Notes under the pieces: generated by a model
Database searches by the model: none
Seen by the model: only the letters and a program-made list of their open reading frames with translations
Told to the model about the DNA's origin: nothing
Translations under genes and position numbers: made by a program
Shown here: positions 23,041 through 59,300 of the stretch, in pieces
Position numbering within the stretch: the first letter of the stretch is position 1
How the letters are laid out: each line of letters starts with the position of its first letter
DNA from: Haliotis rubra
Lineage: Eukaryota
Length of the DNA stretch: 64,000 bases
Direction: 5' to 3'
Assembly: GCF_003918875.1 (NCBI RefSeq)
Contig: NW_025764892.1
Span: 930,001-994,000 of the forward strand

Positions 23041-23155
23041 GATCCAGGGTTCGATTCTCCACATGGGTACAATCTGTGAAGACCATTTACCCGACCGTGA
23101 TATTGCTGGAATATTGCTAAAAGCAATGTAAACTAAACTCACTCACTCATTCACT
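23041..23155 (+). mobile_element. SINE family A, 5'-truncated
   Basis: B box through to the ACTC tail. Confidence 0.85.
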
Positions 23156-29264: not shown

Positions 29265-30189
29265 GACAAAGATTGATAGAAAAATTGTTCTAAACTCCCT
29301 CCACTGACATGTATCCGTGAAATGCTAATTAATGGATTATTGCAGTATTTAGCCTATGGATAGGCCACGACTTCTTTGTTGATATGTAATAACTGCCATT
29401 ATATCCCCTGTTGTCCACACACCTGCCGCGGCTAGCTTTGATATTTCTCTCTTGAGTGAATGCTCTGTGTTGATATACCAAATTGTACGGATGCAGCCAA
29501 TCAAAATCCACATCAAAATTTGCACTTACATTGGTAAGCCAAAATGACGACTCCTACTCACGTCGGTAACTTCAACCTTTCGGTATCCAATCTGTCAATA
29601 ATAACCATGGAACATTGCTACATAGAATAATCCTGTAATTGTGCGTTTTGACATTTCCATCGGTGTACGTCTCCACGTTAACGTTTTTCCGGTGATATTT
29701 GAAACGGTAGGTGACAGATGAATTTAGATGAGCTTACGTCCATTACTTACCTAAGAACACCATGCACACAAATACACTTCACAAGTTTGGATTCTGCGGG
29801 AAAGTATTTATGATGTAATGTCATGAACAGTTATTGTAAGCAAATCAAAAGTTAACGGAAAAAGAAACGGAAATCAACAAAATACACGCACTTGATAAAG
29901 GGTATTAATATGGAGTATTACATTTTAAGAATCTAGGAGTTATTCCTTTTCCGCGTGCAAATAAAGTGATATTACTGGATGTTATTTGACAAATCAAACA
30001 GCCGTAAAATGTATGAGACCCGTGCTGGGTGGGCGAACCTTCTATTCGAAGTCGGACGCCTTGTCCACATGACCAAAGAGGGCGTCTGCCGTCAAGCTGA
30101 CAAGGTAAGGATGTCGATGGAATTAAACCCACCAAATGACGTCAATTTCTAACTGATTATGTCTCATGTGGGCGAATTTTCAGAATTGT

Positions 30190-30348
30190 CGGTGCGGTTT
30201 AGTAGCCTAGTGGTTAAGTCGTTGACTCGTCACGCCGAAAACCCGGGTTGGATTTCCCACATGGGTACAATGTGTGAAGCCCATTTCTGGTGTTTCCTGC
30301 CGTGATATTGCTGGAATATTGCTAAAAGCGGCGTAAAACTAAACTCAG
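30190..30348 (+). mobile_element. SINE family A
   Basis: Matches the family consensus. Confidence 0.88.
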
Positions 30349-37838: not shown

Positions 37839-37972
37839 GGAATACTTTGAGGTCCTTCTGGAAGAGAGTTTGAATAGCTTGTATACAGTTAAAGCAAGCA
37901 CTCACTCACAGAAAGCTGGTGTGCGTTTTTCGACATGCTTCTCTTTCGATTTTGTCAACGTTAAGTTGACAA

Positions 37973-38127
37973 GGGCCGGTAAGGTAGCCTAGTGGTTCAA
38001 GTGTTCGCTCGTCAAACCGATTTCCAAAAAATGGGTAAAATGTGTCAATCCCAGTTCTGGTATCTCCCCGCCTTGATATTGCTCGAATATTGCTAAAAGC
38101 GGCGGAAACATATACTCATTCACCCAC
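37973..38127 (+). mobile_element. SINE family A, degenerate
   Basis: gtagcctagtggtt ... aatattgctaaaagcggc. Confidence 0.75.
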
Positions 38128-39354
38128 TATGTGTAAATCTCACAACTAAATATAAAGTGTGGCAGAAGGTATATCACACATGCATCATGTCATTCAGAAT
38201 TCAGAATCATTGTACCGATATCGTGAAGTCAGCATGACACACTCCGAGTGACGAGCTCTATATATGTACATTAATGCATGTCAATCTACCATCCGATATA
38301 CATTCATTGTCAGGTAGGAATTATGTGCATAGAACGGCGAGTCGGCGATGAACAGCGGTGAAACATTGTAAGGCATGCACTACATAGCACACTGTACAAG
38401 CAACATGGCCTTGAAGCGTACAGCAAAGTTTTAGTGTTAACGTTCATTGGATCATTGATGTATCCGAGACTCCCCTCCGAGAAGATGAATTAATATTTCC
38501 ATATGGACATACACCCTCACTTCTACCAGTTACAGTTACAGCTCACTTCACCGTGTCCTAAATGTTGTGCATAAACAAGCTCGACTATGGCTACTTGGGA
38601 AAATTGGTAGGTCAAGGGTCACGTGTTCTCCACGATTTCACCTAACAGACGAGGTGAAGGATACCGAGACTGACACTTGTGCCTCCTAACAGCTGATCAT
38701 ATCATCTCAAGTTTCACCATCGTTGCAGTGGGAGATATACTATAGGTAGGTGTTGTAAGGTGACATTCTGCAAAACGTTGAAACTGCACAGTGTTCGACG
38801 TTTGATTGGCATTTTAGAAGATGATATTTGATGAACATAGGGATTTTTTTTCTGGGTTACATCTTCTATGGTAGAGTTGCTGTTCAATATTCTTACTGCT
38901 TCATCTCCCATGTAGATGGCGAATTAGATGCTTGATTGGCATTTTAGAAGATGATATTTGATGAAGATGTAACCCAGAAAAAATCTCTATGTTCATGTAC
39001 AGTGTTCGTTGTATATAATTGTTGACGATTTCGTTAGGTTAAGGGTTGTGTCTACTGGGGGAGAAAGTATATTATATTTTAGGAAAATGTATATTTAATC
39101 ATATATCTAAATTTCCTTGCTATTACAAATTAGTTCATGCCTGGAGCTTGTAGATTCACGATTTTCTAGCACACATTGTCAGGAACTCAATAGGGTCAGT
39201 ACTATAGATGTCGCAGTAAATGTTCATCAAATATTCCACAACTGTTGATCAGCGCATCGATCGGTACATTCCCTGAAGTGACACAATACTGAAACCTATT
39301 TCTGTTTACAACATTATAACTGCTATTATGTGTACCTATATATTCAGGGAGTCT

Positions 39355-39792
39355 ATATATTGGGGATGGACCCCCCATGTGTGTCCCTTGCGATGAGGTT
39401 TTCACCATCAAGCATATTCTGCTTGAATGCGTGGACTTATCGTCTGCAAGGGACTAACATTATGATGCAACAAGTCTGAAAGATCTGTTCTCCTGCGTGA
39501 GCGCTCATCTCATAGTGAACTACCTTAGGGAAGTTGATCTGTATCATAAACTGTAATTGTGAAATGTGACTATCATAAATTGTAACTGTGAAATGTCACT
39601 AACAAATTGCCTACCTTTAAATTTGGTGCTATGACTTTTTCTGCTTTTAAATGACAACGTAATGAATATATGTTTTGGAAATAAAACTCATTCCGAGTAT
39701 GTACTTACAATGTTTATTTATGCAAACTTGTTCTCGTCACTATATGGCTGGAATAATGCCGATGTGACGCAAAACCCATCTCAACAACTCAA
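39355..39792 (+). mobile_element. 3' fragment of a diverged sister I-group LINE
   Basis: Translates GDGPPMCVPCDEVFTIKHILLECVD...SLKDLF; related tail gccgatgtgacg followed by caactcaac. Confidence 0.8.
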
Positions 39793-39951
39793 CACGGAGT
39801 CTATACGTGGTTACATCTTGTGCAGAAAAGAATGTCATTTGAATAATATTTTCATTATTTTAACATAAACGGTATTTGTTTTTAAATTTAATACAGTAGT
39901 ATTACATGGTTTTAGATGATCGTGTTTAGACATAGCAAGTTTTCATTTTTC

Positions 39952-40103
39952 AGGTAAAATACCTTTATAACGAACTCCAAGGAACCACTGAAATTAGTTC
40001 GTTATATCCGTAGTTCGCTATTCACTTTTTTAAATGATAATACTACTATAAGGTTTAATCGGGACTTTTAAAACAGTTCGCTATAGCCGTCAGTTCGTTA
40101 TAT
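39952..40103. mobile_element. MITE fragment (pogo/Tigger-like, repeated gttcgttata / tataacgaac)
   Basis: Inverted and direct copies of a 10-bp subterminal motif. Confidence 0.5.
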
Positions 40104-40135
40104 GTAATTGTTTGAATACATTGGCTAGTACACGT

Positions 40136-40546
40136 CAATATAGAACAAACTTTGTGGATAAAAACTTCTTTTTATTCGTGAGTGCGACGTTTCGATACAG
40201 ATTCTTGTGAACATGAAGAAGGGGGAAGTATATATATACTGGATGCAACAATGTAACAAAGAAAACAACATAATTAACATAATTGGCTAGGCAGAAAGCT
40301 GATGAAGCCAGAGAGTAGACAAAGGACAGGCGTGGAAGCCAATGCTGTACAAATAATAATTAGATGTTTATACAGCAGAGTTTATACAGTAGATTGGGCT
40401 TGGTGAATGAGTGCATCTTCATGTTCCATTATGCTTGACAACGGTACAAGAATCTGTATCGAAACGTCGCACTCACGAATAAAAAGAAGTTGTTATCCAT
40501 AAAGTTTGTTCTATATTGTACTTCCCAACTTCTGAAATGCCACTCA
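40136..40546. mobile_element. Penelope-like element remnant with about 72-bp inverted arms around an about 235-bp spacer
   Basis: caatatagaacaaacttt...cgacgtttcgatacagattcttgt / acaagaatctgtatcgaaacgtcg...aaagtttgttctatattg; AATAAA follows the gaaacgtc motif. Confidence 0.65.
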
Positions 40547-41589
40547 AAGAAGTTAGTACACGTCAAACATGTATGGAATGCACGAAATGCATGACTGGTG
40601 TATAAACTCGATAACATTGTCATTGATAACGTTTTACAATACACAGAACGCTGTAACATGTTACACCGGCAACAGCCCAGCCATACTGCAAAGACATTAC
40701 TAAATACATATATGACACGGCAAAACAATTATATCTTCAGTGCAACGAACGTCAATGACAAACTGTCAATTTGACTCTAAAGAATGTTAATTACACCGTG
40801 ACGATTGTCTATTTCAAGTTATTAAAGGCCACGATGTATCATGCTGACTCAGCAAGTGTTCCACCTAAACACAGGATCAGTGTCGCTATCAGAGCGGGGA
40901 TAATCTATTGCCTGTAACTTATGTTTAGTCCCCAATCAACTGTGTTCCTCTCTGATCGAGAATGTACAATCAAGGACATTGGAAGTCAATTTTCGTATGT
41001 CAGCATTTATGATCCTCTGAGTCATACGATACAATCATGCTTGACTGCATCAAACAATGCAAGTCGGTTTCACACGCTCTGTATCAGATATCTTTTGTGC
41101 AATCGAATGAAGAAATATCGTTTATGAGCATGTAATTGCTTTCTATTTCCGTCATATATATACATCCGTGCCTGAAATATGTACACCATTTACTCAGATA
41201 CCTTTTATATACGCATATTGTATTGAGTATTGAAGTGTTTGTCAAGGCATGTGATACTGACAATTAAACGTATCTTAAACAATCTCTATCGTCTATGCTC
41301 AAAGCATCTCTTTGATAATAGTGTCTGCACTTTAATGCCACCAGTTACTGGTAAACACAGGTTCGACTTCAGTTAAAGTTTTTATATATATATTTCGTCG
41401 TATCTTATAGAATCTTTTACAATAGTATAGCATCTTAGTATAGTATCTCATTAATGTGTGCATCTTTCCATGAGGTACCATACAAGCGAAGGCAGCCGTT
41501 TTTCTAAGCTTGCCGGAAGTTTATTCTTTCGTTTGTTCGTTACAAGCATCGATTCATGTAATTCGGGTTCCATGGACACAATCAGGGAC

Positions 41590-41782
41590 TGAGCAAATGG
41601 GTTTAGTTTTACGCCGCACTCTGGAAGATGTAAGCTATGTGGCAGAGGTCTGTAAATAATAGAGTCTGGACCAGACAATCCAGTCATCCACAGCATGAGC
41701 ATCGATCTACGCAATTGGTAACGGATGACAATCAACTAAGTCATTCAGCTTGACCACATTGGTTACCTCTCATGACCAGCCT
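41590..41782 (-). mobile_element. SINE family B, degenerate
   Basis: Reverse-complement match (gtctggaccagacaatccag, agcatcgatctacgcaattgg). Confidence 0.8.
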
Positions 41783-42027
41783 ATGATGCAATGGTCCCGT
41801 ATTCTGAATCAAAATCCTTACCGATGAGCGCGGGATGAAGTGTAATTTTTGCGTTCATATCATGGCATTATTGCCATCACGCTTGCGGGGGTCAGCACTT
41901 CTGATTATGACTGCATACAACAGACTTTACTCGCCAATGATATATATTGATTTGAAATAAAGCAATAGTGGCCACAACTATTATCTGTACTCCTTCTTAC
42001 ATATCGTGCTTAAGTGGATACATGTAG

Positions 42028-42194
42028 AGTGAGTGAGCACGGTTTTACGCTACTTTTAGAAATATTCAGCAACGTTACGGCGAGGGACACCAGAAACGGG
42101 CTTCGCACATTGTACCCATGTGGGGAATCGAACCAAGAACCGGTCTTGAGCGTGTCGAGCGAACGCTTTAACCACTAGGCTACTCCACCGCCCA
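42028..42194 (-). mobile_element. SINE family A
   Basis: Reverse-complement match to the consensus. Confidence 0.88.
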
Positions 42195-42439
42195 GGGTAA
42201 ATGTGAAGATATTTTGAAACATAATGAAACATGAGTATAATTCTGTGTTGCTTGAGAAATAGCAATATACCATCATACAATGGCGATTTTCTCCTCAACT
42301 GTTCTTTACGCCTTGCCACCTTATGGGTTATCCACTGCAGGCATTCAGCGTGACATATTTTAATGACTAAGCTGCCTCAGCCCCCTCTGTGATACTAACC
42401 AGTTACATATATTCATTTTTTTTCGTTGCAGCTTTATCT

Positions 42440-43624
42440 ATGGAGGTGCTTGTGCTCGGTATACTCCTCGGTGTGGTAGCTCTGGCTCTCATTGTATTGT
42501 TAAGGAGGAAATCAAGCGCACAGAGAGAGGACCAGGTAAACAGGCCCTACAGTGTTGTTCCGGTTCACTGAAGGCCAAGAATGCCAATACATTAATCGAC
42601 TTAGTCAAGAGTATATCTGGTAACAGAGTTTGGTAACAGCCTTACTGGTAACATTTGTTGAAGAGGATTCAGTATACAATCTAAACCCAAGCAATATTCT
42701 GACCATGTGTTGACACTAATAGCTCACTGCATGTATAAGGATTTTGTGATCAACCGTAGTCTGTCTCACAGTCCCTGAACCGCATTATTGTCTCTTGTGC
42801 CCAGCCAATTCTACAGTGCTAAAGCAGTAAATGGAGCAAGTCTATATTTCCCCAGGATAAGGAATCTTCCATCTCACTGGGGCTCCTTTTCAATTTAAAA
42901 GGAATTGTTTGTTTAAGAGACTAAGCGCCAGCCTAGATCAACTGCTATGTGGGTACTGGATGCTGACAATGATTTGAGGGATGATTATTTGTCTTGGTCT
43001 ATTTCAAATTTGATTTGGTTACATTTTTCACGACGACGTGTCCTCTTGAGTTCCTCAAATTGAAATGATACCCCGTTCGTCTTGTCTTTTAATAAATATT
43101 CCTAAATTATTCGTCCATCTTCAGGGAATGTTCAGGACATTCTTTGAAGCATGTACTGTATGCATAAGGGCCGTGTCATAAAAATAGCTCAAGGTTTACT
43201 CAAGAAGTCTTTGGACTTTGAACATGAATGACAATCTTGTTAGTTCAATGATTGGATATTATTGAACGAGACTTATTAGTTCACAGGGTTACTAGTCCTT
43301 GTCATTTGTGTTACCATTAACTTGTGGTTAAGGTTATATTTTATATAATAGTGGTCATATTTCAGATATAGACAAATACATTCTTGCAGTAAGATATGTT
43401 TCAGTCCATCTACTTTCATATGATTACTTGCAGTGTAAGCAGATGCGTTTAAACTTTTGTTCTAGGATGTACAATCACCCAAGAGACAAGGTTCCGTCGA
43501 GGTAAAGAAAGGATCAGTTTCGGAGATGGCCAAAGCGTTTGACCGAGCCAGTGGGGGCAGCTCTCCGATCATTACTGGCCGACAACAGGTCAAGCAGCGG
43601 ATCAGGGACGAGGTCTTTGAATGA
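42440..43624 (+). CDS. Uncharacterised 84-aa single-pass membrane microprotein, paralog A
   Basis: Exons 42440-42535 and 43466-43624 (phase 0, GT-AG): MEVLVLGILLGVVALALIVLLRRKSSAQREDQDVQSPKRQGSVEVKKGSVSEMAKAFDRASGGSSPIITGRQQVKQRIRDEVFE. Acceptor 8 nt upstream of the ATG; AATAAA at 43697; paralog at 51333. Confidence 0.85.
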
Positions 43625-43862
43625 ACATCCTGCATTTAGCTCAGTTAGTGTAAGCGTATGAATTCCAATTCCATCGTGTATGACTGCCGCAGCTTGAATA
43701 AATGTATATTTTGTATTTATTCCTTTTCAGTTTATCTTTAGAGAGTTCAGGAAATGGATATTTATATACAGACCCAATGATCGGACACCGCACATGAAAT
43801 GCAAACACAAAGCTATGAGCCTCCGTGTCTTAACGTGTCTTTAAGCAGAGTCAAGCCTGGTT

Positions 43863-45542
43863 TGAGTGAGTGAGTGTGTGAGTTTAGTTCTACGCCACCT
43901 TTAGCCATATAACAGCAAAATCACGGTTGAGAACACCACAAATGGGCTTTATATACTCGGCAGCAAAAAAATCCGTCAGTACGAATTCAAAATTAGATAA
44001 GCACTGTAATCAAATCATTACAGAAATGGACACAATAAGCGGATCAAAAAAATTTTTGTGTACAATATCCTGACACATCAATGAATAACTCAGCAATTTC
44101 AAGACATTACGTGAACGTTTGCAGTCCATTCCGACCCTTGACTTCAGTATCTAGTGTGACCACCACGAGCGGCAATAACTGCAACACAGCGTCTATGCAT
44201 GGAGTGCACCAATCGATTGATGAAAGCCATTGGCACATGGAACCACACTCTGAGAAAGGCCTGGGGCAATAAATCGGCTGTGTTCGGCCTTGGTATGACA
44301 TTATTCAGTCTCCTCTGAATTTCATCCCAAAGATATTCAATTGGGTTTAAATCAGGACTAAGGGCTGACCACTGCATAATGTTGACACCGTTCTGCTGTA
44401 GGAAGTCCCGTGTAGCTCTGGCAGTATGGGCCCGGGCGTTATCATGCTGGAAAATGTTATTCCGGTGACGTGCGAAATGTGGTATGACATGGGGTCTGAG
44501 AGCTTGGTCGATTTAGCCCACCGCTGTGATACAGCCTCCTCTCCCTGGACCAAGGTTCTGGAACACCACAGGACCCACTCTCTGGTTCAGGCCTATTCAA
44601 CCCAATGATGCTTGCACCTCCCCATGAGTCTTTTTCCATAACACTTTGGTCTGAGTAACGCTGGCCACGTCGTCGCTTTATTCTTGTTCTGCCATCTGCA
44701 GTTGATACGCAGTACCGACTCTCATCTGTGAACAGAACAGTTCTCCATTGCCTGTATCGCCAGTTTTGGTGTTGTAGGGCAAACTGTAGACGTTCACGCC
44801 GATGACGAGGAGCGAGGATATGTCCACGGTCAGGTCTACGGCAAGGGAGGTTCCCGCTGTTAAGACGTCGGCGTACTGTATCAGTACTGATTGGTCTTCC
44901 GTGCGTTCCCACTGTCTGGCGTGCTGTTTCGGATGCCTGCATGAAGGGATTCTGTACATGCTGTCGCACAACATGGCGGTCTTGTCGTCTTGTGGTCCCC
45001 CTTGGTCTGCCAGTACGGGTGCGATCATTTGTGGTGTTAGTGGCCCGGAAACGTTGCTGCAGCCTGTAGATGGTCTGAACGTTGACCTTGAAGTTATTGG
45101 CAATGGCTTGTGCAGTGTGGCCAGCTTCAAGTCTTCCTAGCGCCTGGTTCCTCTGAGCTGTCGTGAGAAGGGGCATCCTGCTGACGTTGTAATGTGAATT
45201 TTTCAACCAGGTTTGGGGGTGCATTTTATAGGGCTGGTCCTTGTGAACAGCACGTGCAGCATGAGTTGCATGAAAAACATGGAGAACACCGTACCATCTC
45301 CGAGATCAGGTTGCGTTTTTGAGACCATTTCCTGGGTTCCATTCTGAGTTTGGGAAGGAATGTCTTTGCGCAGGTAAAGTTGGAGATGTTGTCAAAATTA
45401 TACAATCAAGACATGAAATGAGTTTACAGTTATCCGTTTCTGCGAAGGAAAATTCCAAACAGACGTTTCTTTTGCGGCTCAGTATATATTGTACTCATGT
45501 GTAAAATCGAACGCTTCAACCACCAGGCTACCCAACCGTCCC
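43863..45542 (-). mobile_element. SINE family A copy split by a Tc1 insertion
   Basis: Tail half at 43863-43951, head half at 45487-45542. Confidence 0.75.
43954..45484 (-). mobile_element. Second Tc1-family transposon, full length, frameshifted
   Basis: Imperfect TIRs tactcggcagcaaaaaaatccgtc / gacgtttcttttgcggctcagta with TA flanks. Transposase 45176 to 44144 has TGRPR, FTDESRY, HDNARAH, SPDLNPIE and GGHTRY spread over several frames. Confidence 0.93.
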
Positions 45543-46076
45543 AAACCAGATTTATTTTGGGTTCGAAGTCATTCGCCGCTTTCCACCTTGTAGGGTGAAT
45601 AGGTCAATGAATGCTTATTTGTTACCTCTAAGAACCGATTGACCTGCAGAAAGAAAGGTTCGGGTTAAACGACTAATTGAAAAGTGCTAGTAAACTGATG
45701 TACTAAAGAAACTACACACTCGGTGCTTTAAGGTTATTTCCCCCAAATCGGCGTAAATATTTTGACAGGTGTTTTGATTGTGACTTACAATCACAAACAC
45801 TGTGTACGACCACAGATATCGTACCCAAATACAATGTTGCCAGGGTCTTAAGTTCACGCCAAACGTAGACGATTCATCGCATACCCCGAAATGGACGATA
45901 TGCCCGGATGCAGCCAAAACACACAATCTGTCACAATCTGTGTTCCTGCTGAAACTCAACGCTATTGATGCTGATGACGTCACTGTGAAGCATCCGGTTG
46001 TGCAAATGGAGAAAGCTCAAATGATGGTCATCTTGTTGGGTGGTCACTCTCGGTCCTCCAGCTCAGAGACTGTCAG

Positions 46077-46246
46077 GGGCGGTGGAGTAGCCTAGTGGTT
46101 TAAGCGTTCGCTCGTCACGCCGAAGACCCGGGTTCTAATGCCCACATGGGTACAATGTGTGAAGCCCATTTCTGGTGTCCCCCGCCGTGATGTTGCTGGA
46201 ATATTGCTAAAAGCGGCGTAAAACCAAACTCAGTCAGTCAGTCAGG
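46077..46246 (+). mobile_element. SINE family A, full length, (CAGT)n tail
   Basis: TSD gactgtcag. Confidence 0.92.
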
Positions 46247-47439
46247 GACTGTCAGTTGTTTGGCCCGTCTGGTTGACCTGTCTCATTAGTCGGCCCTGTA
46301 CAGCCATACGTTCTGGCAATATGACTGTTCAAAGCCCCATCCTGCGACACTCCAGTGGCTCGTCCTGGCTCCGCTGCTGATAATCTTGGCGTATATATAT
46401 GTACCTTTAACAAGTTTGTCACTAACTAATTTATCTTAATCGACTGTGTTTTACACTGATGGCGCGTAACATGAACATGCAATTCAACAAAATCATGATT
46501 TTCATGATATCCCATGCGAAACACTTTTGTAAAAGATATATAAAACAATAATGTTTGTGACTTGTCAGTCATACTTTCAAAATATATTCGTCGTTTACAG
46601 AAAAATAATCTTAAACCACCAGGTGTATATTTTATCTGGTACGTCAGATTAACAGCTTGCCGACCATCTACCAGCCCCACCCACACAAGGCAGCCATTCA
46701 CAACACAAGTATATATATACTCCAAAGTATACCCGTACCCTTGTCTATGAATACATTGCAAACAGATGGGTGTACGCAAAACACCAGGCGTGAACTGTCC
46801 TTGTTATGTCAGTTTGTTTCATCAGTAACAGAAAGTTTGGATTCCACTCGATGACTATCGGATCCTGCCACGTGTACGGACAAGAAATCTATTCCCTATT
46901 TGCTATTCACTAGGAAAATATTTTAGAAAAACTGAATGGACTGGAATGGGAAATGAGCATGTTGGAGATATTATATTCCACACATACTGTCGAAGGTTCG
47001 ACGAAAGAAGAAACACCCTGTCGGTTTTCCAATGTACAAAATCAACTGGCCTTAATTATTTCATCGTTTATGTAAGTTAAACTAAATCAAGCAAAAACTC
47101 CATATCCTACTTTTACGAGATCATAATCCAAGCTGTGGATCCAATCCTCCTTTATCTTTCCTTCACAAAACATTCTACAGTATTGTCCATGTTATATAAA
47201 AACATGGGATAGTGCTAACATACGTTTGTCTTTCTTCATGATGATATACTTTTGGGGGGATTACAAATGAATGAATTCATCACTTGCAGAATTACTTTGG
47301 AGGTATCTATCAAAACATAAAGTATGGGTTTGTATCCTAAATTGAACATATGATTTAGACGTTTATTATTGAGTGGGATATCGATGATTTATTTAGCATT
47401 CCTGTAATTGTCCGTGAGACAAGCGTTCCATGATTATAG

Positions 47440-47673
47440 GTGTTTGTTTGTTGTTTAACGCTGCATTCAGCAATATTCCAGCTATATGACGGCGGCCTGT
47501 AAATAATCGAGTCTGGACCAGACAATCCAGTGATTGACATCATGAGCATCGATCCACGCACTTGGGATACGATGACATGCTTTTACAGGAGCCTGACTAC
47601 CGTATCCCGTTAATTGACTCTTACGACAAGCATGGGTTGCTGAAGACAATTCGAACCAGGATATTTACGGGTA
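47440..47673 (-). mobile_element. SINE family B with (CAAA)n-type tail
   Basis: Reverse-complement match to the 9880 copy. Confidence 0.88.
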
Positions 47674-47846
47674 TGTTTCACCTTTAAGAGGTAAAAAATA
47701 TATATGAACAATTTGAACCAGTACAGTTAAATATTATCACCTGGTAGTCAATATCGTAAAAGTTATATGATGGAGTTACGTGGGATAATATGCGATGTTA
47801 CTTTTGAATCTGTTCGCACATAGGGTTAGCGTTAGGTTAGGAGCTA

Positions 47847-47868
47847 ATATATATATATATATATATAT
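47847..47868. repeat. (AT)n microsatellite
   Basis: Read directly from the sequence. Confidence 0.9.
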
Positions 47869-48302
47869 GGGTTCCAAATATACCACAGCGACAAAGGTAG
47901 CGTTTCGTTGATCAGACCAGGAAACCCTGAATATCGAGCTGCTACGGAAAGTAAACAGCTCTATATCGTGGCAAACCGAAGGAAAATATGAACGTGTTTA
48001 CAACAATGTACTAGAGTTAAATCTGAATGTTTGAAATAACTTGACATTTCACATACTCTGAATATCGATCGTCACTTAAGTTATTCATTAAATACTATGC
48101 GTAAGGCAGTTCCGGATCACTAACGAAACAACGACTGCATGCGCCTTCGCGAAAAGATGTCTTAAGCGCCTAAGGACAATTTCTGTATTAGCAATGTTTC
48201 ATGTTACTCACGTCAAAATATGAAATCGATACGATCCTGACTTATTCGAGAAAACTAGCTAAAGAAACACTGCGCCAAACTACGGCAGTTGCGAATCATT
48301 TC

Positions 48303-50665
48303 AGGGTATTCCAGATCACGTGACAAAACGAGGCAGTGTTTGGTTATTGATGCACGTTTGGGGCATCAAGGGGCTGTGTCAAAAAGTAACGCGTGTTTAA
48401 TTGAACAGATGCATGAACAATATTTATAATGGTGTCTCATTTACGAATAACAAACATTTCAGTAGATAACATCATCTGCTAGGTAGATATAGCTGTAACA
48501 CTTGGTGCTCATAACAACACACACCTATTCCAGTATCAGGATTCCAGGTACCATCGTGAGCTGAAAAATATTCTCTTGTGGTTTATACATACGTGGTTTA
48601 AGGTACTCATCTCTTCTATATCGAAATTTAGTCATATTCATACTACGGGGTCTTGCTGTTTGTGGCTGATGAATTAGGTGAAATTCACTAGACGCTGATC
48701 TGTTGTGAACCTAATGTACTATTTTAATATTTTGACGTGACTTTGACATGCGACTTTGACTTGTAAATTAGAACTGTCAACACAAAATAATCCATTTTTC
48801 ACGAACTTTAACGCTTTTATTCAGTCAATATAAGACATTTATCATCATCAGTCACTGAAAGTAAAGCTAACGAAAATAATAAATTAATACTAACATATTT
48901 GAACTCTGTATGTGTGTGTATCTTCATATGTCCAAAAGAGAAACAAACTAGTGTCTATTCCAGCCTCATTGATTCCACCTCTGGCATAAGTAACAGGGCA
49001 TTCTTAATTGTCACAAAAGCCATGTCTCTGTTGCCGTGGTTAATCACGCAATGACAAGGTATGACCACGCCTCCTCCTTTCTCTGCTGGTGCAGGCCAAG
49101 GGGGGAAACTTGGAACAGGTTCTCCAGCTGCTCAGCGAACACACTGCCACCCACATCAAGAATTCGCCTGAATGACCCTCAAGACCTCTTGTCACATGAC
49201 CAATGGGTAGACCAGCTACATCCTTAAGTACAAGATTACGCTTCACATCTGTAACCAAATTATGCAAAATTATATCAAAGGATGTAGCGGCACTAGCAGA
49301 GAGTTCCAGTCCAGATATGTCCGCAGTGGTTGAGGTTGCATCACGGATACTGGTAGTCTTCATGCATGACTTATCATAAAGTTTCTCGTAAGTGTCAAAA
49401 CATGGAGACAGCCCAACTACATCATATCCCTTGTGGATACGTTTCTGGTACTTCTCTCTTACTGGTGTTGACAAAGCATCTTCCAGAGATGTTAAGGTCA
49501 TAGCAGCACCTGTGTTCTCACCCGAGATGCTGTGTGTTTGGGTAAAACTAGGTACTGCCGTTCCCTGTAATAGATCTCCAAACTCCAAACGTTAGCCCAT
49601 CTCAGTATTTACTCATGGAGACTTAAAAAGGTTTGGTTGCTGATTTACCTTTCAGCCATTAAAAATTAGAGGTAAGCCCTTTACCCACAACGAACATTAT
49701 ATTTATGAACGTAAATTACGACTTCACCAATACGTATCATATAGATAAATACATCATGTTTAAAATGTGACTATTCTAAAATCAAATACTGGTCAATATG
49801 TCACTGACTATTCAAGTAAACAATTGCGAAAGTTTTCATTCTTTCCTGTTGAACGCTCAAATAATTATTTTTTGAATTGTAAAAATGATGCTAGTTTAGT
49901 GGCTGTTGCACATTGAACTATACTGTATCTGTACTGTATATGTATCTGTACCTCTGTTTGTACGATACAAGTTTACATGAAGTTATTAAAACAAAAGAAT
50001 TATATGAGTTGGAAAGAACAATCTTTTCAACCTCTAAGCTTGTCAAGTTAGTTATTTCCAGTATTGATAACCCTTTACCTGGCATACTCTTCTGTACAGC
50101 AAATTACAAAACAGATTAAATGAAGATGAACAAGTTTTACGTATCTACTTTGTGCAAATCACGTCCTCCACAGACCCAAAAGTAAGTATATGTTTTAAAT
50201 AAAGGGAACCGACGTAACATCGTAAAATATTTACTTTATTTCAACAGTTATTAATAGTTTTCGGCAGTTGAAAGTTTTGAGATGATCCCTATATTCTGGC
50301 TATCCGGAACTGACTTAACCACGTGGTCCCATAAATTGCTTATTTCTCCAAAAATATGGCAGATGTAAAAAAAAAAAGGTGAAATGTATATGCATGCAAT
50401 GGATTGCTAACATTTAGCAAGTTGATTCTATTGTTGTTTCACACGGGCCGTCCCGAATGAGTTTTCCTGATGTGCCAACGACAGATGACGCGATGATTGG
50501 TGTCCTCGTTACAGGGCGCGCAAGTACACTTCTGGTTCAGATCAAGTGAAACAAAATATATCATCTTAAAATAACACATTGAGTGTAGAAATCCATCGAG
50601 GTTTACAGTTTCTAGGTGTTAATGTGTGTGGAAGTGATCCGGATTACCCGTGATCCGGAATACCC
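48303..50665 (-). mobile_element. Decayed DNA transposon, probably pogo/DDE_1-like (C-terminal remnant only)
   Basis: Inverted pair gggtattccagatcacg (48303) / cgtgatccggaataccc (ends 50665), with related motifs at 48102 and 50298. ORF 49040-49588 contains LEDALSTPVREKYQKRIHKGYDV, recalled as typical of invertebrate pogo-like transposase C-termini. Confidence 0.45.
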
Positions 50666-51332
50666 TTACCCACTGTACATGTAGATGGCTTGATGATGTT
50701 ACCCACTTACTCAAGAAATCGCTCACGAGATGATCAAAGGGAGATCACTCTCATTTGCATTATTAAGGTCAAGACCATTGCAGGTTTGGACGGCCATGTT
50801 GTTTCTACATTGTATGTTTAATATGGTAATAACTCGATTGTTGTATGTTGGCCTTTGCAAAACGAAACCTCAACAAAACAAAATGTACCGTAGATAATGC
50901 ATGTCGATGTCACAATATGGCAAATGAGTTTAAATCACTAAATCTAATCGTACTCGTTGTTTTGGTCTATTCTTCTATTTAATTCCAATATACCATAGAA
51001 ATTATCATTAGAAAGCTAAGCGTGTATTTTCCACGGTTCTATCACGTATCAAAAGCGTGATCTAAGGAGACTTTACTGTTTTCAATGTAGCGGTTTCGAA
51101 AGAAGATTCGATACCTGCAAATTAACATTCGAAACCAGATGGAAATCTGGAATTTTACTCTATTTTGACCAATCCATGACAAGCGTACTTGTCTGTCTTA
51201 TGATGTAGCTTATACGAAGCGGATCCTAACCATTATGTCGTGTACAACAGATCATGCCTCAACACATTAAATACTTTATACTACCAGATTGTACTGGTTT
51301 GAAAAGGTATCATGAATATTTCAGCTTCACCT

Positions 51333-52591
51333 ATGGAGAAGATTATTCAACAGTACGCTGTGCCTGTTGGTGTATTCACCCTATTGATGGTTATCACTTT
51401 ACTTGTGGCTGTAATCAGGAAAACATGCTCATGGGTAAGAATAGAATCCAATCTGTACACAGGCATAAGTTGGCTGTTATGTTTGATGATGAAAACAGGG
51501 ACTTAAAATTGATTCACACCTATTTCTCACCAACATAAAAAACATGCAAACATGCTATCTGTCATAATTGCATAAATTGGCCTCTGTTAATGCCATTAAC
51601 TCAACTGCATACCACAATGAGAGGATTATCCTCCTATGGCCAGACAGGTAGCATATGGGTACATTGCCCAGGGAGCTGAGTGAGTGAGTTCTGTTTTACA
51701 CTGCTTTAAGCATTATTCCAGCAATATCATGGAGGGGGCTTCAAACAGTTTTCCCATGTGGTGAGGAAGCCGGTGACCACAAACACTTTAACTACTAGGC
51801 TATCCCCTGGGAACTGAGAAAGAAATCGAGTACACACTGATCTACTGACCCAGTGTATAATATGGTGCTTTAAACATGCCAACTGGTGTGCCTGTGAAGA
51901 TACAGGTTAGAATTCATCTTCAGTAACCCATGCTTGTTGTAAGAGGCGACTAACCGGATTGAGTGGTCAGACTGGCTGACGTGGTTGACACATGTCATCG
52001 TCTCACAATTTAGATCGATGCTAATGCAGTCGATCACAAGATTTTGTGGTCCAGACTCCATTATTTACAGACTGCCGCCATATAGCTGAAATATTACGTA
52101 GTGCCTCATTAAACAACAACCAAACAACCAATGGGTGTGGATTGTGCGCATTATGCAAGTATGCTGATTATGTCAATATTTCATTCTAACAGTACTGTTA
52201 AAACAAATAATCCGTGAATTATTATGACAGTTCTCTTATTGCTAAAGATGTAATTTGTAAAGGGTTTCCTTTTGTTGTGTCTAAAGACATGTGACCAAAT
52301 ATGGTTCTTTTCTTTGTATTTTGCATCTATTAATGTGATTTGTATCTGTTTTTCGGCTTTTCTGAAAATGCAATATTTCCAAAATATTTGTTCACAGTAT
52401 GTGACGAAATGTAGTTTTACAGAATGTTGTCATTTTAGATTTCAAAGAAAAGGGAGAAGAAACCCCTACTAGTGAAGATAGGACCAGTTTTAGAGATGGC
52501 TAAAGCGTTTGACAGGGCAAGCAAGGACAAATCACCAGTCATCACAGGAAGACTACAGGGGATGAAGCAGCGCATACCGACAAGAACCTGA
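51333..52591 (+). CDS. Uncharacterised 84-aa single-pass membrane microprotein, paralog B
   Basis: Exons 51333-51434 and 52439-52591 (phase 0, GT-AG): MEKIIQQYAVPVGVFTLLMVITLLVAVIRKTCSWISKKREKKPLLVKIGPVLEMAKAFDRASKDKSPVITGRLQGMKQRIPTRT. Same acceptor-to-ATG spacing as paralog A. Confidence 0.82.
51677..51808 (-). mobile_element. SINE family A, degenerate
   Basis: tgagtgagtgagtt...tttaactactaggcta. Confidence 0.7.
51891..52129 (+). mobile_element. SINE family B with (CAA/CAAA) tail
   Basis: Matches the family consensus. Confidence 0.88.
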
Positions 52592-53421
52592 TGTAAAATC
52601 TAGTGAATCATGAAATATTATATTCACTGGAAATGTCCATGTGTGTTGGATACAGACAGGAAATCATTGGTAAAAATGTGGCTCAAATGTTAAAAAGGCC
52701 TAGTTGCCTTTCAAGTCATGATCTCTGCTGCTTAGTTATTAACTTATCCAAATTGCAGAATTTAAGAATTTTCTATCAGAAAAGGCTCTCCTCACTTGCT
52801 AAGGAGCTTAATACACATTTGAATGATCTGAGATAACAATTTGACACAATATTAAGAGCAGTTTCTAAACAAACAATTTGTAAATTGATAAGGCAGCATC
52901 ATTGGTAAGAATCAGTCAAAAAAAAGTCGCTTGACAATGACATGAAATTACCTAGAACCTTTCTGCAGACAACAAAAACTGATTGGGGTTAAAGGACACT
53001 CATCAGAGGCCTTACAACTAGTAGCTCAGAAACATCCCTTACTCAATACTCCATTTAGTATTGATTTCAGTTTGAGATACAGTGTACAGTCAAATATGTG
53101 TTCAAGGCACATATTCTATTTGGAAAAATGTTGACAAGAAAAGAGTGCCAATCAAAGAAGAAAAGAGTGTTGGTATATAAAAAAGTCATCTTTAAACATT
53201 CGAAAGACATCAAAACTGAATTCATGACATGTCTTTACTTATGAATTCACAAATATAACATACATGTCTGTAAAAAATAACAACAATTTGCTCCAAAACA
53301 ATAAGATTTTCAAGCAAGTTGAAAATGGACTCTCATTTTGCAGCACTGTACAAACTGTCATATTATCACTATACATGTACATTTCACCCTACTGATTGCC
53401 TTACATTCAAGTGCAAAATTT

Positions 53422-53584
53422 GACTGACTGAGTTTGGTTTTACTCCGCTTTTAGCAATATTCCAGCAACATCACGGCGGGGACACCAGAAATGGGCTTCA
53501 CACATTGTACCCATGTGGGGATTCGAACCCGGATCTTCGGCATGACGAGCCAACGCTTTAACCACTAGGCTACCCCACCGCCTC
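53422..53584 (-). mobile_element. SINE family A, full length, (CAGT)n tail
   Basis: TSD tgcaaaattt. Confidence 0.92.
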
Positions 53585-54799
53585 TGCAAAATTTAAGAAA
53601 TTATGATGATGGTATTGTTTGATTACCTGATTTTCACTGATAACTATTGAAATAGAGAGACAGTAAACAGTCTTCAAAAACATATAAATATATATTGTAT
53701 TATGAGCATTCTAGAAGTTGGCGAGTCAATAACAAGGAATATGACTCTATAGATAACAACTTCTTTATTGCACAGAGAGATGCTTTGATGTACATTCTTA
53801 CTCCCTTATCAAGTTCTTTACATTTTCAACTTGATAACTGTGCTAGAATCTACTCTATGCAATTAAACAAGAAGTTGTTATTCATAAACAAACCTGTCAT
53901 ATCATGAACAAAAATAAATATGTATTAAAGAGAGGCTACGATACAGAGTGTTCTCTGTCTAGATACAATTCCTGAGGATTGCACTCCTCGTAAAACCGTA
54001 ATGCCTTAACTCGGTCATCATGTAAACAGACAGCCATTGACAGTAAACTTTTCATGTATAACACAGTATGAATTAACAAAGAATTGTCTTGTACGCACTT
54101 TGCTTGGACAAACATTTTGCCTTAGCCTCGTCTCCCTTTAAAGGTTCGTCCAGAATTGTACGTACATGCTATTCAGCTCATTAAAATTTGGCACAGGAGC
54201 TATGCCTCCATTTTCCCCTGATTAAGCATTTAATGATGAAATATGACCATGCGCTGCTGTTTTAGGCTCTCTGTCGACGTTGTAGGCAAAGAAGAAAAAT
54301 AACAAAGAGGCCATTTTTTCGTGAACTTTAGGCCAATGAGTGAACCACTTGACTGTGTTAACGTCATATGTTTACATTAATTTCCCGCTGCATTTACTAT
54401 TGCATGAGGGCCAAAGTCATGACCCTTATTAGGGACTTGAAGGTAGTCGGAACGTGGGCAATGAACAGTGATATTAGACAGTGGTATGCATTCCGATGGC
54501 ACTTTTTCATAAAATGTGACAACTTCCTGGTTGTATGTTAATGATATCACAATGATCATGTTATGAATAGGCAATTTCATTTACCATAACAGGATTCCGG
54601 TTTAATTTGTAAATTATACTTACTGATTCTCCCAAACCAGATATTGGATAACATTTAGGGACGAAATACAGTCTGTCAAATAACTGTGTAACAATGAATG
54701 TTACAAAATATAATAACTGAATTAATATTACCATTTATGTTAAAACAAATCCTCTGATATGGTTTTATGCTATTATCTCATTCATAAAATATACATATG

Positions 54800-55318: not shown

Positions 55319-55499
55319 ATGTGGAAGATTACAGTATTAATGTACATATTAGATTTCCTGAGCCTAACACAACATTATATTACCAAGGCCATACACCCAA
55401 ATAAAGCCAACAAGTCCTCTGCTAAAGCATCGTACAATTCACAACATATCATGAGCCTGTATGTACCAATCATCATGCCAGGTGTTCTAGAAATGTTGA

Positions 55500-55665
55500 G
55501 GGCGGTGAGGTAGCCTAGTGGTTAAAGCGTCCACTCGTCACGCTGAAGACCCGGGCTCGATTCCCCACATGGGTACAATGTATGAAGCCCGTTTCTGGTG
55601 TCCCCCGCTGTGATATTCCTGGAATATTGCTAAAAGTGGCGTAAAACTTAACTCACTTACTCATT
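55500..55665 (+). mobile_element. SINE family A
   Basis: Matches the family consensus. Confidence 0.9.
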
Positions 55666-55751
55666 CGAAAAGCTGAGCTTATTCTACCAATTACAAACAC
55701 ATGCAAATGCAAGTCAATTGATCACATTAAGATACAGTTTTTCAAGTCTAA

Positions 55752-56397: not shown

Positions 56398-59300
56398 TCA
56401 TATCACAAACTGCTCATCGCTGATGGTCTCAGATTCACCAAATTTCTGTTTCCTATTATTCAGGGATTGTTCTGTTGTGGCTGAAACATAAAAATAAATG
56501 CAAGGATAGATACAGATAGAGACCAGGGACTAGTTGTTTTACATAAATTACATACAACATAAAAACATCACTTCACTGACATTTCTGTGACCTCTTTTAA
56601 ATTATTTACCAAACATATTCATTACAAAAACATAGGGTTTGTTAGAGGTAAAAGAATTTAGAGGTAGATGAAAGAAGCATGATGCTCAGAGTGTTTCACT
56701 GAATTATAAACGACTGAGATTTTCTCTATATTACTGAAATTTGTTGACAGACTTAACAAAAGGAAAAAGTGAATTTAAGTTTTATTCTTTTGCACTTTAG
56801 TCAAATTTGGCAAAAATAAAGTTTCCAAATGGCATGCCTATGTATTGACATAATCTCCATGAAGTGGATGTGCCTGCCATGATGAATGATAATAATTATT
56901 CCTGCTTGAAATGATTTGTGGAAGCGCAAAGAAAGGATCCATTCTGTTATGATTAGCTTAGGGATTCAGAGCTTGATTCCTTTATCTGAACCCCTTGAAA
57001 ATCCTGGTTAGAATTGGTCTTCAGCAACCCATGCTTGTCGTAAGAGGTGACTTACGGGATCGGGTGGTCAGGCTCGCTGACTTGGTTGACATGTCATCAT
57101 ATCTCAACTGTGCAGATCAATACTCATGCTGGCGATCACTGTATTGTCTGGTCCAGACTCGATTATTTACAGACGCCGCCATATAATTGGAATAGTGAGG
57201 AGCACGATGTTAAACAACAAACCAACCAAAAACCATTTATCTGATGACAATCTGAAATTTCAGTTGAACACACTGGATTTTGATTCAACTAAATTCAATG
57301 ATATCACAGCTCAAAATTATCTAAAAGCATTGTGACTTGCATACATGCATTTAACAAAATACATCACATTTACCTTCATCCTCCATCAGTTCTAGCTGTA
57401 CTTGTTGTTCTGTAGCCTCTTTTGCTAAAACAAATTCAATCATATTAGCAATTATATGAGTCAAAATTTACATTTGTAAACTGTTAAGAGATATGCCTTC
57501 AAGTTAAGAAATGCTTTCGTAATCATTACCTGCTCAAACCTTTAACTACCTGCATTTACTTTATGGTATCTGGATTAAAAAATATATGTGGTGATCATTT
57601 AATACTTGATAAATGGTAATTTTCACTTTGTATCAGTTGTTCACCATTTGGTCGGGATGATTGTTGTGGTTGCTGCTCCTGTTGTTGCTGCTGTTGTCCC
57701 TGCTGTGATAGTTGCTGGTTGCTGCTGTGTCCCTTGACCTGCTTGTGGTTGCTGCTGTTGTCCCTGCTGTGATAGTTGCTGTCCTTCCTGCTGTGGTTGC
57801 TGCTGTTGTCCCTGCTGTGAATTCGCTGACAAAGAAAAACCAAGTATTTCAAGACCCAATAAAGAATCTGTATTTTTTGTATTTAGGCCAAAAATGTGCA
57901 TGTATGTTGTTGATCAAATTAATGTCAATTTTATCAAAGTCATCATGTTCATAAGCTTTATTTATGCCTTTTCACACTGACTGGCCATAACCTTCAATCT
58001 CATCATATTGCATGCATGTAAATGTCTAGTAGCAAACATAGATGTAGACAAGATGAAATAATGAAATATGAACCAAATATGAAGACTCCACACTAAAACA
58101 GGCCAAAACTTCCATGTACTAAACTGTCTACATGCTGCTACCCAAGTGAAAGATCATGAAAGCCACTTTTACTTTCATCACAACTGAGTTGTCATTCTCA
58201 CTGATAGAACAATTTTATTTTTCTTAAAAAAGATATCACATCACACTTCTGTAGCAATAAATAATCTCTCAATAATACTATCAGCCCTCAGGGAAGCTAC
58301 CATATAATTTCTTCCCGAAAAATTACATATTTAGATTACAATATTAAAATAAAAAAGTTCGAATGAATTAATGCAACATTGCATTAAATGGACTCTCACA
58401 CCCTCTACTGATTGAGCGACCCCTATAGAGTTATGTCCCTTGGAGCACTCTTTATGAATATTCTACGCACAACTTGTGATTGAAACCAGTTTGGCAAACA
58501 CGGACAACACCACGTGTGACAGTTTTCGATGTACGGAGCAATTGTTTATATTCCATATATGGAAGTGTTCTCTGTTTGGAAGTTCTTCGGCTCCAAGTTT
58601 CAGTTATTTATTTCAGGAAAGTTGTAAGGGATAATAAGTCTTTTAATGCATCAATAGGAAGCTAAAGTGAGTGCATATGCCCGAACATGTATAATATAGG
58701 CCAAAATATTGTTGAAAATGTGTGACATTGTGCCTTTAAACATGAATTTCTTCAGTCAGGTTTCATGTGACCTATAATAACCTTGACCTTGGACTGATGC
58801 ATGCATCCCACAGATCATGCATGTAATACTAACCAGTGGCATTTGGAAGTTGTACATAGATGTCCAAGACATTTTTATGGATTAAACTTCATTTTTATTT
58901 CCCTCATGACGTTTCGGGACCATTCCAGGTCCCTTCATCGGGTGACCTGACAGTTGAGACTATGATGTCGTCACTATTGTTCATGTCAATAACAAAAGTG
59001 AATATTAAATTCTTCAGTCAATAAATGTTTTAAACACCTATCAGTGATATTAAAACTACCCAATAGCCTATAAATATCTGAAATATGCCAAGTCAGCAGT
59101 ATTCCAGCTGTATGAGGCAGCAACTCCAGGTAAGCAATACTGAAGCTATGTCTTATTTGTTTTTAATGCTGCACTCAGCATTTTCCAGCTATGTGTGGCA
59201 TCTTCAAGGGTCCTCACAGTATGCAGTCATATGGAGACAAAAACATAACATACTTACCATCTGTAATGCTCAGGTTTCCAAAATGAACAGGAGGTCTTTT

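What the first reader, a model, noticed from the sequence alone, without database searches (positions are those of the whole stretch)
42440..52591. Pair of 84-aa membrane microproteins sharing an unrecognised cytoplasmic motif
Seen: two 2-coding-exon genes 8.9 kb apart on the same strand. Both have a phase-0 intron, an acceptor 8 nt before the ATG (cag|ctttatctATGG vs cag|cttcacctATGG), an N-terminal hydrophobic helix followed by basic residues, and a length of 84 aa. The TM halves are highly diverged, but the tails keep VKKGSVSEMAKAFDRASGGSSPIITGRQQ-VKQRI vs VKIGPVLEMAKAFDRASKDKSPVITGRLQGMKQRI, with synonymous changes inside the motif (gcc/gct, cga/agg, gcc/gca, ccg/cca). That pattern suggests protein-level selection. 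The motif exons do not appear in the ORF track. Inference: signal-anchor adaptors with a cytosolic amphipathic helix resembling S-V-x-x-[LM]-x-x-x-F-[DE] short motifs of cytoskeleton-associated proteins, plus candidate phosphosites (SPKR, conserved SP). I do not recognise the family.
Basis: partly seen in the sequence, partly recalled or inferred. Interest (0 to 1): 0.75.

Follow-up and report, generated by a model that had tools for sequence, protein, structure and literature searches.

The report
Two orphan membrane microprotein genes
Two neighbouring small genes each encode an 84-residue protein, if translation starts at the ATG just after a splice site, with one membrane-spanning helix and a conserved tail motif that has been kept by selection; one gene is spliced in RNA-like data, but no relatives were found and the function is unknown.

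Summary
Both exon pairs are at the stated coordinates. Each reads 84 aa: a strongly hydrophobic N-terminal helix, then basic residues, then a tail with 25 of 49 aligned residues identical.

Exon 2 is under purifying selection. dN/dS is 0.15 overall and 0.09 in the core, while synonymous sites are near saturation and flanking DNA has lost all similarity.

For gene A, contigs of two RNA-like runs break exactly at the predicted donor and acceptor. Exon depth is 6-15 times intron depth. A 60-nt upstream piece is joined at the predicted acceptor. That piece is absent from the assembly and has no in-frame stop in its 30 visible bases, so the ATG start is likely but not proven. The RNA also leaves the genome 29 nt after the stop codon. 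Gene B's expression could not be tested.

No credible relative exists. Pfam and a word search were blank. The 51 hits of the exhaustive profile search sum weak internal repeats, 50 of them in proteins sharing one repeat unit. Only these two copies occur in the genome. A borderline resemblance to a segment of UDP-glucose 4-epimerase is an untested lead.

Best reading: lineage-restricted N-out/C-in membrane microproteins presenting a cytosolic docking helix. The cytoskeletal-motif idea is unsupported.

The parts
42432..42535 (+). Gene A, exon carrying the ATG (coding 42440-42535: ME, a 19-residue hydrophobic helix, then RRKSSAQREDQ)
   Evidence: An RNA-like contig in X1 (depth 165) covers 42431-42535 exactly and carries 60 further bases 5' of the acceptor that are not in the genome.
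42536..43465 (+). Gene A intron, phase 0, GT..AG
   Evidence: Intron contigs in X1/X3 have depth 10-14 against exon depths of 43-165. They overlap the exons by 29-30 bases, about k-1 if Logan's k is 31 (42507 and 43493), which places the graph branch points at the two splice sites.
43466..43624 (+). Gene A tail exon, coding part with TGA; the RNA contig runs on to 43653
   Evidence: AlphaFold2 on the exon alone gives one helix at residues 18-28 (VSEMAKAFDRA), mean pLDDT 66.
43502..43603 (+). Conserved core of tail A (VKKGSVSEMAKAFDRASGGSSPIITGRQQVKQRI)
   Evidence: core dN/dS 0.09.
51325..51434 (+). Gene B, exon carrying the ATG (coding 51333-51434: MEKIIQQ, a 21-residue hydrophobic helix, then RKTCSW)
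   Evidence: No RNA data were laid on it.
52439..52591 (+). Gene B tail exon, coding part with TGA
52472..52576 (+). Conserved core of tail B (VKIGPVLEMAKAFDRASKDKSPVITGRLQGMKQRI)

Best explanation
These are two tandem paralogous genes, 8.9 kb apart on the + strand, separated by a decayed Tc1/mariner element. Each most likely encodes an 84-residue single-pass membrane protein. The hydrophobic segments (19 and 21 residues) are too long, and lack a small-residue cleavage region, to be typical cleaved signal peptides. They have a near-neutral N-terminal flank and a strongly basic C-terminal flank. By the positive-inside rule this places a 2-9 residue N-terminus outside and the roughly 55-residue tail in the cytosol. 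The membrane helix has diverged freely, but the tail has kept a short amphipathic helix (V-x-E-M-A-K-A-F-D-R-A-S), a Ser-Pro, and I-T-G-R-x-Q-x-x-K-Q-R-I. Function therefore lies in the tail, not in helix-helix packing. The inferred mechanism is that the protein tethers a linear docking motif to the cytosolic face of a membrane, where it recruits or regulates a soluble partner, possibly switched by phosphorylation at the conserved Ser-Pro or at the juxtamembrane RRKSS of A. Shown: the sequence anatomy, the duplication, purifying selection on the tail frame, and transcription with splicing of gene A. Inferred: the start codon, the topology, translation, and the docking function.
For: The anatomy was read directly and the hydropathy computed. 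The tail alignment has 25 invariant columns. dN/dS is 0.15 for the whole exon and 0.09 for the core, with pS about 0.7 and Fisher p = 6e-6. All neutral flanking similarity is lost. Runs X1 and X3 behave as RNA: depth is zero in non-repeat intergenic bins that the DNA runs X5 and X6 cover, and exon depths of 165 and 91.5 (X1) and 100 and 43 (X3) compare with intron depths of 10-14. Their contig ends fall exactly at 42535 and 43467. A 60-nt piece is joined at the acceptor at 42431/42432, while a DNA contig of X6 runs collinear across that site. The ATGGAG and the 8 nt before it form the best-conserved block of an otherwise diverged exon 1, 16 of 18 bases. This fits a start-codon context better than an internal Met-Glu. 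The predicted structure is one short helix over the invariant block and disorder elsewhere. Only two copies exist in the 1.38-Gb assembly.
Against: The reading frame is open through all 39 known mRNA bases upstream of the ATG, and position -3 is T or C, a weak context. A longer N-terminal extension is therefore possible. The 5' exon cannot be found in the window or the assembly. No contig spanning the exon 1-exon 2 junction was among the listed joints, since 623 were not shown. Gene B has no RNA evidence. There is no cross-species comparison, no peptide evidence, and no known partner. The mechanism is analogy only.
Confidence: 0.5

Rival explanations
1. The two exon pairs are the transmembrane and cytoplasmic-tail exons of larger type I membrane protein(s). 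The ectodomain exons would lie upstream, outside the window or in unassembled DNA. Alternatively, they are two alternative 3' cassettes spliced to one shared upstream gene.
For: Both exons start at an acceptor 8 nt before the ATG with the frame open across it. The spliced-on upstream piece of A has no in-frame stop and no ATG in its 30 visible bases. A TM helix followed by basic residues and a short tail is the usual end of a type I receptor. EGF-repeat genes were noted in the same window (not checked here), and a sub-threshold CUB-like open frame lies on the + strand.
Against: The upstream piece matches nothing in the 42 kb of window upstream, so A is not spliced to the EGF/CUB exons seen here. 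No paralogous upstream exons exist between the two loci. Only 7.6 kb, largely transposon and SINE-like repeats, separates A from B. The ATGGAG and its 5' context are the best-conserved part of exon 1. The exon-1 contig ends after only 60 upstream bases despite depth 165, which fits a short 5' UTR.
Confidence: 0.25
2. The proteins are secreted peptide precursors. The hydrophobic N-terminus would be a cleaved signal peptide, and the conserved roughly 40-residue tail would be released at basic sites as a signalling peptide.
For: They are small proteins with an N-terminal hydrophobic segment. Several basic pairs are present (RRK, KR, KK in A; KKR, KK in B). Gly-Arg follows the conserved SP[IV]IT.
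Against: The hydrophobic cores of 19-21 residues have no small-residue cleavage region and abut RRK or RK directly. The dibasic site before the motif in A (KK|G) is K-I in B. There are no cysteines and no G-[KR][KR] amidation signal. No signal-peptide predictor was available, so this rests on sequence rules from established knowledge.
Confidence: 0.07
3. The open frames are not translated. The transcript would be non-coding, or B would be a silent decaying copy, with the similarity being a conserved RNA or DNA element.
For: There is no peptide or ribosome evidence. B is untested for RNA. The proteins are absent from all protein collections searched.
Against: Changes concentrate at synonymous positions in this frame, 16.5 of 23.5 synonymous sites against 12.5 of 78.5 non-synonymous sites. 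That is the signature of translation, not of an RNA or DNA element. Both copies keep intact frames, the same length, and good splice sites after a duplication old enough to saturate synonymous sites.
Confidence: 0.05

Closest known systems
Single-pass regulatory micropeptides (phospholamban, sarcolipin, myoregulin, DWORF, insect sarcolamban)
   Same: Under 100 residues with one membrane helix. Phospholamban also has a basic, phosphorylatable cytosolic segment next to the membrane (RRAS, against RRKSS in A). This comparison comes from general knowledge.
   Different: Those proteins are tail-anchored, with the helix at the C-terminus, and act through a conserved membrane helix that binds the SERCA pump. 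Here the helix is N-terminal and poorly conserved, and the tail is the constrained part. No Pfam match, including no phospholamban or sarcolipin match, at E up to 10.
Small single-pass accessory subunits of channels and pumps (KCNE, FXYD)
   Same: N-out/C-in topology, small size, and a cytosolic tail with helical and phosphorylatable segments that modulate a larger partner. This comparison comes from general knowledge.
   Different: KCNE and FXYD have defined extracellular segments and signature motifs (for example FXYD), absent here where only 2-9 residues precede the helix. No sequence similarity was found.
UDP-glucose 4-epimerase (GalE/GALE), helix-strand segment of the C-terminal domain
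   Same: Local sequence: SV[LS][ED]M-x-KAF[ED][KR]ASG-x-S-x-P...GR. A profile search of solved structures gave plant epimerases at E = 0.06. This genome's own GALE reads GYSVLDMVKAFEKASGKS|IPYSKVERRLGD, 11 of 18 residues identical to gene A. The matching part is helical in my model.
   Different: Only about 25 residues match, with nothing before or after. GALE has an intron inside the segment and the two genes have none. The score (about 16 bits) is what chance gives in a large library. There is no Rossmann fold and there are no catalytic residues. This is a lead, not a relationship.
Repeat proteins carrying ...TETAPATDTASSGLNGRLQRIAQR... (the library gives no source or taxonomy; by eye they look bacterial or phage-like)
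   Same: E-x-A-x-A-x-D-x-AS...GRLQ..QRI lines up with the tail motif. Whole-protein E-values reach 8e-19.
   Different: The scores are sums over 3-9 near-identical repeats. The best single repeat scores 18 bits, with an independent E-value of 240 for the library. I treat these as a chance resemblance.

Membership tests
Any Pfam-A family | Profile match at or near the gathering score | tested here: not met
   There were zero families for both tail exons and for the B helix exon. The A helix exon gave only sub-threshold hydrophobic-segment matches (best 14 bits against a cut-off of 27).
UDP-glucose 4-epimerase (TIGR01179 galE) | Full-length protein of about 330 residues with an N-terminal NAD-binding Rossmann fold and catalytic Tyr-x-x-x-Lys | tested here: not met
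   The genes encode 84 residues, with a membrane helix where the Rossmann fold would be. The genuine GALE exons lie on contig C2397 in three tandem copies.
UDP-glucose 4-epimerase (TIGR01179 galE) | Significant local similarity showing descent of the tail motif from a GALE fragment | tested here: inconclusive
   E = 0.06 against 177,635 solved-structure sequences. 10 of 16 residues were identical in the tblastn match to this genome's own GALE, E = 0.003 in a 9.5-kb targeted search. No GALE protein was among the 51 hits at E <= 1e-3 in the 1.84-billion-protein search.
Phospholamban/sarcolipin-type micropeptides | C-terminal (tail-anchor) membrane helix with conserved SERCA-binding residues | tested here: not met
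   The helix is N-terminal. The helix sequences are poorly conserved between paralogues. No Pfam match.
Repeat proteins with the TETAPATDTASSGLNGRLQRIAQR unit (hits) | Tandem array of the roughly 60-residue unit, with an individually significant match | tested here: not met
   There is one copy of the motif per gene. The best single-repeat score is 18 bits, independent E-value 240.
Neuropeptide/prohormone precursors | Cleavable signal peptide and conserved dibasic sites flanking the conserved peptide | tested here: not met
   The hydrophobic cores are 19-21 residues and abut RRK or RK. KK before the motif in A is KI in B. This was judged from sequence rules only; no predictor was run.
Single-pass N-out/C-in (type III signal-anchor) membrane proteins | One hydrophobic segment of about 19 residues or more, with net positive charge on the C-terminal flank | tested here: met
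   Kyte-Doolittle windows score 3.33 and 2.76. The N-terminal flanks are ME and MEKIIQQ (net about 0). The C-terminal flanks are RRK and RK, followed by KKREKK. Topology itself is not testable with these tools.

The most novel reading that the evidence does not exclude
The conserved tail motif would be an exapted fragment of the UDP-glucose 4-epimerase coding sequence. It would have been copied from a processed transcript, since it spans what is an exon junction in this genome's GALE. Placed behind a membrane-anchor exon, it would create a new membrane-tethered peptide gene that then duplicated, with both copies held under purifying selection. A second unexcluded possibility is that A and B are alternative terminal cassettes, or a linked transcript, driven from one distant or unassembled 5' exon.
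Probability: 0.15. Interest if true: 0.6.

Novelty: new variant of a known kind. Interest (0 to 1): 0.35.

Why it matters
If the start codon and translation hold, this is a taxonomically restricted family of membrane microproteins that gene annotation appears to have missed: the exon peptides found nothing in either protein collection. It has a rare advantage for such candidates. An old paralogue pair gives a clean signal of protein-level selection on a short linear motif. That makes the tail peptide a ready bait for finding its partner. It is one more documented case of small-ORF genes hidden in animal genomes. It does not bear on a long-standing open question, and orphan single-pass proteins are common, so a specialist would find it useful rather than surprising.

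Tried and rejected
- **Word-index protein search** with tail A (29-91 aa candidates): no candidate.
- **Exhaustive profile search** of 1.84 billion proteins with the two-tail alignment: 51 hits. 50 share one repeat unit and one is another repeat protein. All scores are sums of weak repeats. Rejected as homologues.
- **ESM Atlas by features:** best score 0.78, below any useful level.
- **Pfam:** nothing.
- **Own genome**, searched with the protein and with the profile: only the two copies, plus one E = 2.5 match on C2848 that looks like chance.
- **Exact-product look-ups** of both tail exons in public assemblies: none.
- **Degenerate DNA pattern** for EMAKAFDRA in JGI metagenomes: 7 hits in contigs of 43-67% G+C. 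None shares anything beyond the motif with the tails.
- **Search for the spliced-on 5' piece:** the 30 known bases are absent from the window and the assembly at up to 3 mismatches. The last 20 bases give only chance-level hits on other contigs. A positive control pattern was found. A spliced-leader origin is unlikely, because a multi-copy leader gene should have matched.
- **Self-comparison of the two upstream regions** for further paralogous exons: only SINE-like repeats.
- **Calcineurin (PxIxIT), microtubule-end (SxIP), PP1 (RVxF) and 14-3-3 motifs**, checked by eye against the tail: none fits.
- **Not done:** the joined 84-residue proteins were never sent to a search or fold.
Full report
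**Observation**

- Gene A codes from 42440 to 42535 (MEVLVLGILLGVVALALIVLLRRKSSAQREDQ) and from 43466 to 43624 (52 residues and TGA).
- Gene B codes from 51333 to 51434 (MEKIIQQYAVPVGVFTLLMVITLLVAVIRKTCSW) and from 52439 to 52591 (50 residues and TGA).
- Both join to 84 residues, and both introns are phase 0 with good GT..AG sites.
- Both ATGs sit 8 nt behind a CAG acceptor.
Everything was done exon by exon, by reference.

**Real paralogues under selection**

- A sensitive self-comparison of the two loci finds only interspersed repeats of about 170 bp, plus one collinear unique match. That match is the tail core, 43502-43602 against 52472-52575, at 73%.
- The tails align with 25 invariant columns, including EMAKAFDRAS.
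- In the core, 16.5 of 23.5 synonymous sites differ against 12.5 of 78.5 non-synonymous sites. This gives dN/dS 0.09 for the core and 0.15 for the whole exon, with Fisher p = 6e-6.
- Synonymous sites are near saturation and the introns and flanks share nothing. The duplication is therefore old, and both copies have been constrained in this frame.
- A nucleotide alignment of exon 1 still shows homology. The best block is TT-x-CAGCTTyAyCTATGGAG (16 of 18), with a second block over the basic juxtamembrane codons and an 18-nt indel between them. The whole two-exon unit was duplicated.

**Expression of gene A**

The run search returned seven runs of one organism, each holding about a fifth of the sampled words. 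That is roughly the exonic share of the query. I laid four of them on 37900-43850.

*X1 and X3 behave as RNA.*
- Their contigs give zero depth in unique intergenic bins that the DNA runs X5 and X6 cover.
- Exon depths are 165 and 91.5 (X1) and 100 and 43 (X3), against 10-14 over the intron.

*The contig ends fall on the predicted splice sites.*
- The exon-1 contig ends at 42535 and the exon-2 contig starts at 43467.
- The intron contigs overlap the exons by 29-30 bases (they start at 42507 and end at 43493). That is about k-1 if Logan's k is 31. This is what an assembly graph does where spliced and unspliced forms diverge, exactly at the predicted donor and acceptor.
- No junction-spanning contig was among the 15 joints listed (623 were not shown). 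Splicing of exon 1 to exon 2 is therefore strongly implied but not directly seen.

*The upstream acceptor is directly seen.*
- The 165-base exon-1 contig of X1 aligns from 42431 and carries 60 further bases 5' of it.
- A DNA contig of X6 runs collinear across the site.

*Open ends of the gene model.*
- The last 30 of those 60 bases contain no ATG and no stop in the frame of the ATG (they would read LGFSKTQIYRALS-M).
- They are not in the window or anywhere in the 1.38-Gb assembly at up to 3 mismatches. A control pattern was found.
- The 5' exon is therefore unlocated, and the ATG at 42440 is likely but unproven as the start.
- The short 60-base extension at high depth, and the conservation of the ATGGAG context, favour a short 5' UTR.
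- At the 3' end, the RNA contig leaves the genome at 43653, next to GTAAGC at 43650. RNA depth is zero over 43671-43850. There may be a 3' UTR intron 25 nt after the stop, rather than use of the AATAAA at about 43696.

**The protein**

- The hydrophobic segments score 3.33 and 2.76 on Kyte-Doolittle over 19 residues.
- They are 19 and 21 residues long and lack a small-residue cleavage region.
- They have neutral N-terminal flanks and RRK or RK (then KKREKK in B) on the C-terminal side.
- From the positive-inside rule (general knowledge), this predicts an N-out/C-in signal anchor with a cytosolic, basic tail.
- AlphaFold2 on tail A with its paralogue gives one helix, residues 18-28 (VSEMAKAFDRA). 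The rest has low order, with mean pLDDT 66.
- The helix is amphipathic, with V, M and F on one face.
- The membrane helix diverged while the tail was held. I therefore infer a membrane-tethered docking or regulatory motif, possibly phospho-regulated at the conserved Ser-Pro or at RRKSS in A. That mechanism is inference only.

**Relatives**

- Pfam finds nothing, the word-index search finds nothing, and the Atlas finds nothing usable.
- The exhaustive profile search gives 51 hits down to 8e-19. All are repeat proteins. 50 carry 2-9 NGR[LI]Q motifs, and the four I read in full carry the unit ...TETAPATDTASSGLNGRLQRIAQR... 3-8 times.
- The best single repeat scores 18 bits, with an independent E-value of 240. 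I reject these as homologues.
- A degenerate DNA scan of metagenomes gave seven chance hits, none sharing anything beyond the motif.
- The genome holds only the two copies.

**A lead I could not settle**

- The profile hits plant UDP-glucose 4-epimerases in the solved-structure set at E = 0.06, over SVLEMVAAFEKASGKKIP..GR.
- This genome's own GALE has three tandem copies on C2397. It reads GYSVLDMVKAFEKASGKS|IPYSKVERRLGD, with an intron at the bar.
- Eleven of 18 residues match gene A.
- The score is what chance yields in a very large library, and the similarity stops at both ends. I give descent from a GALE fragment about 15%.

**Surroundings**

- A frameshifted Tc1/mariner transposase lies between the genes (44147-45305, minus strand).
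- A minisatellite with a 39-bp period fills 33265-35276 and produces long spurious open frames.
- A sub-threshold CUB-like open frame lies at 23132-23410, and EGF-repeat genes were noted upstream.
- The 5' piece spliced to gene A matches none of this.

**Verdict**

This is a genuine pair of small genes, apparently missed by gene annotation, that are selected at the protein level. They are most likely N-out/C-in membrane microproteins of a lineage-restricted family. The function is unknown and the 5' end is unresolved. Interest is moderate.

Noticed in passing
window 44147-45305 (-): A decayed Tc1/mariner transposase lies between the two genes. It has HTH_Tnp_Tc3_2 (E = 6e-13) and DDE_3 (E = 2e-9) domains in two overlapping frames, so it is frameshifted.
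   Followed up: partly
window 32726-35538: Minisatellite arrays with periods of 33, 45 and mainly 39 bp (about 50 copies). Because 39 is a multiple of 3, they give a 909-codon open frame on the minus strand and long frames on both strands. These are probably not genes.
   Followed up: partly
window 23132-23410 (+): An open frame with the C-terminal part of a CUB domain (Pfam E = 0.004, below the cut-off). It may belong to the EGF-repeat gene noted upstream.
   Followed up: no
window 30180-30348, 31480-31652, 37972-38122, 42027-42193, 46063-46245, 53421-53606, 55489-55666: A SINE-like repeat of about 170 bp, 72-92% identical between copies and in both orientations. Depth is very high in both DNA and RNA-like runs. 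One copy ends 240 bp before gene A's acceptor.
   Followed up: no
window 43650-43655 and 43671-43850: The RNA contig of gene A's tail exon diverges from the genome at 43653, beside a GTAAGC. RNA-like depth is zero downstream, although an AATAAA lies at about 43696. This may be a 3' UTR intron leading to an unlocated exon.
   Followed up: partly
G000:C2397:277600-390930 (-): Three tandem copies of a UDP-glucose 4-epimerase gene, with exon matches at about 277.6-288.7 kb, 319.9-332.0 kb and 382.0-390.9 kb. Some matched stretches contain TGA or TAG stops.
   Followed up: no
L005 1441-1680 (G000:C2848:26228-26341, +): A 61-codon open frame reading ...LTLVLCCCRHMLRIYKRKGGMVGEMSKASKRKVHGSTPLVTGCKN..., a weak match to the tail profile (E = 2.5). 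It is probably chance, but it also follows a hydrophobic-then-basic stretch.
   Followed up: partly
window 57598-57977: A CAG/CTG-type low-complexity stretch, open in several frames. It is Gln-rich on the minus strand and Cys/Pro-rich on the plus strand.
   Followed up: no
window 42505: All four runs, both DNA and RNA-like, read C instead of G. This changes Arg22 (AGG) to Ser (AGC) in the juxtamembrane RRK of gene A. The runs differ from the window by about 3-4% overall.
   Followed up: no
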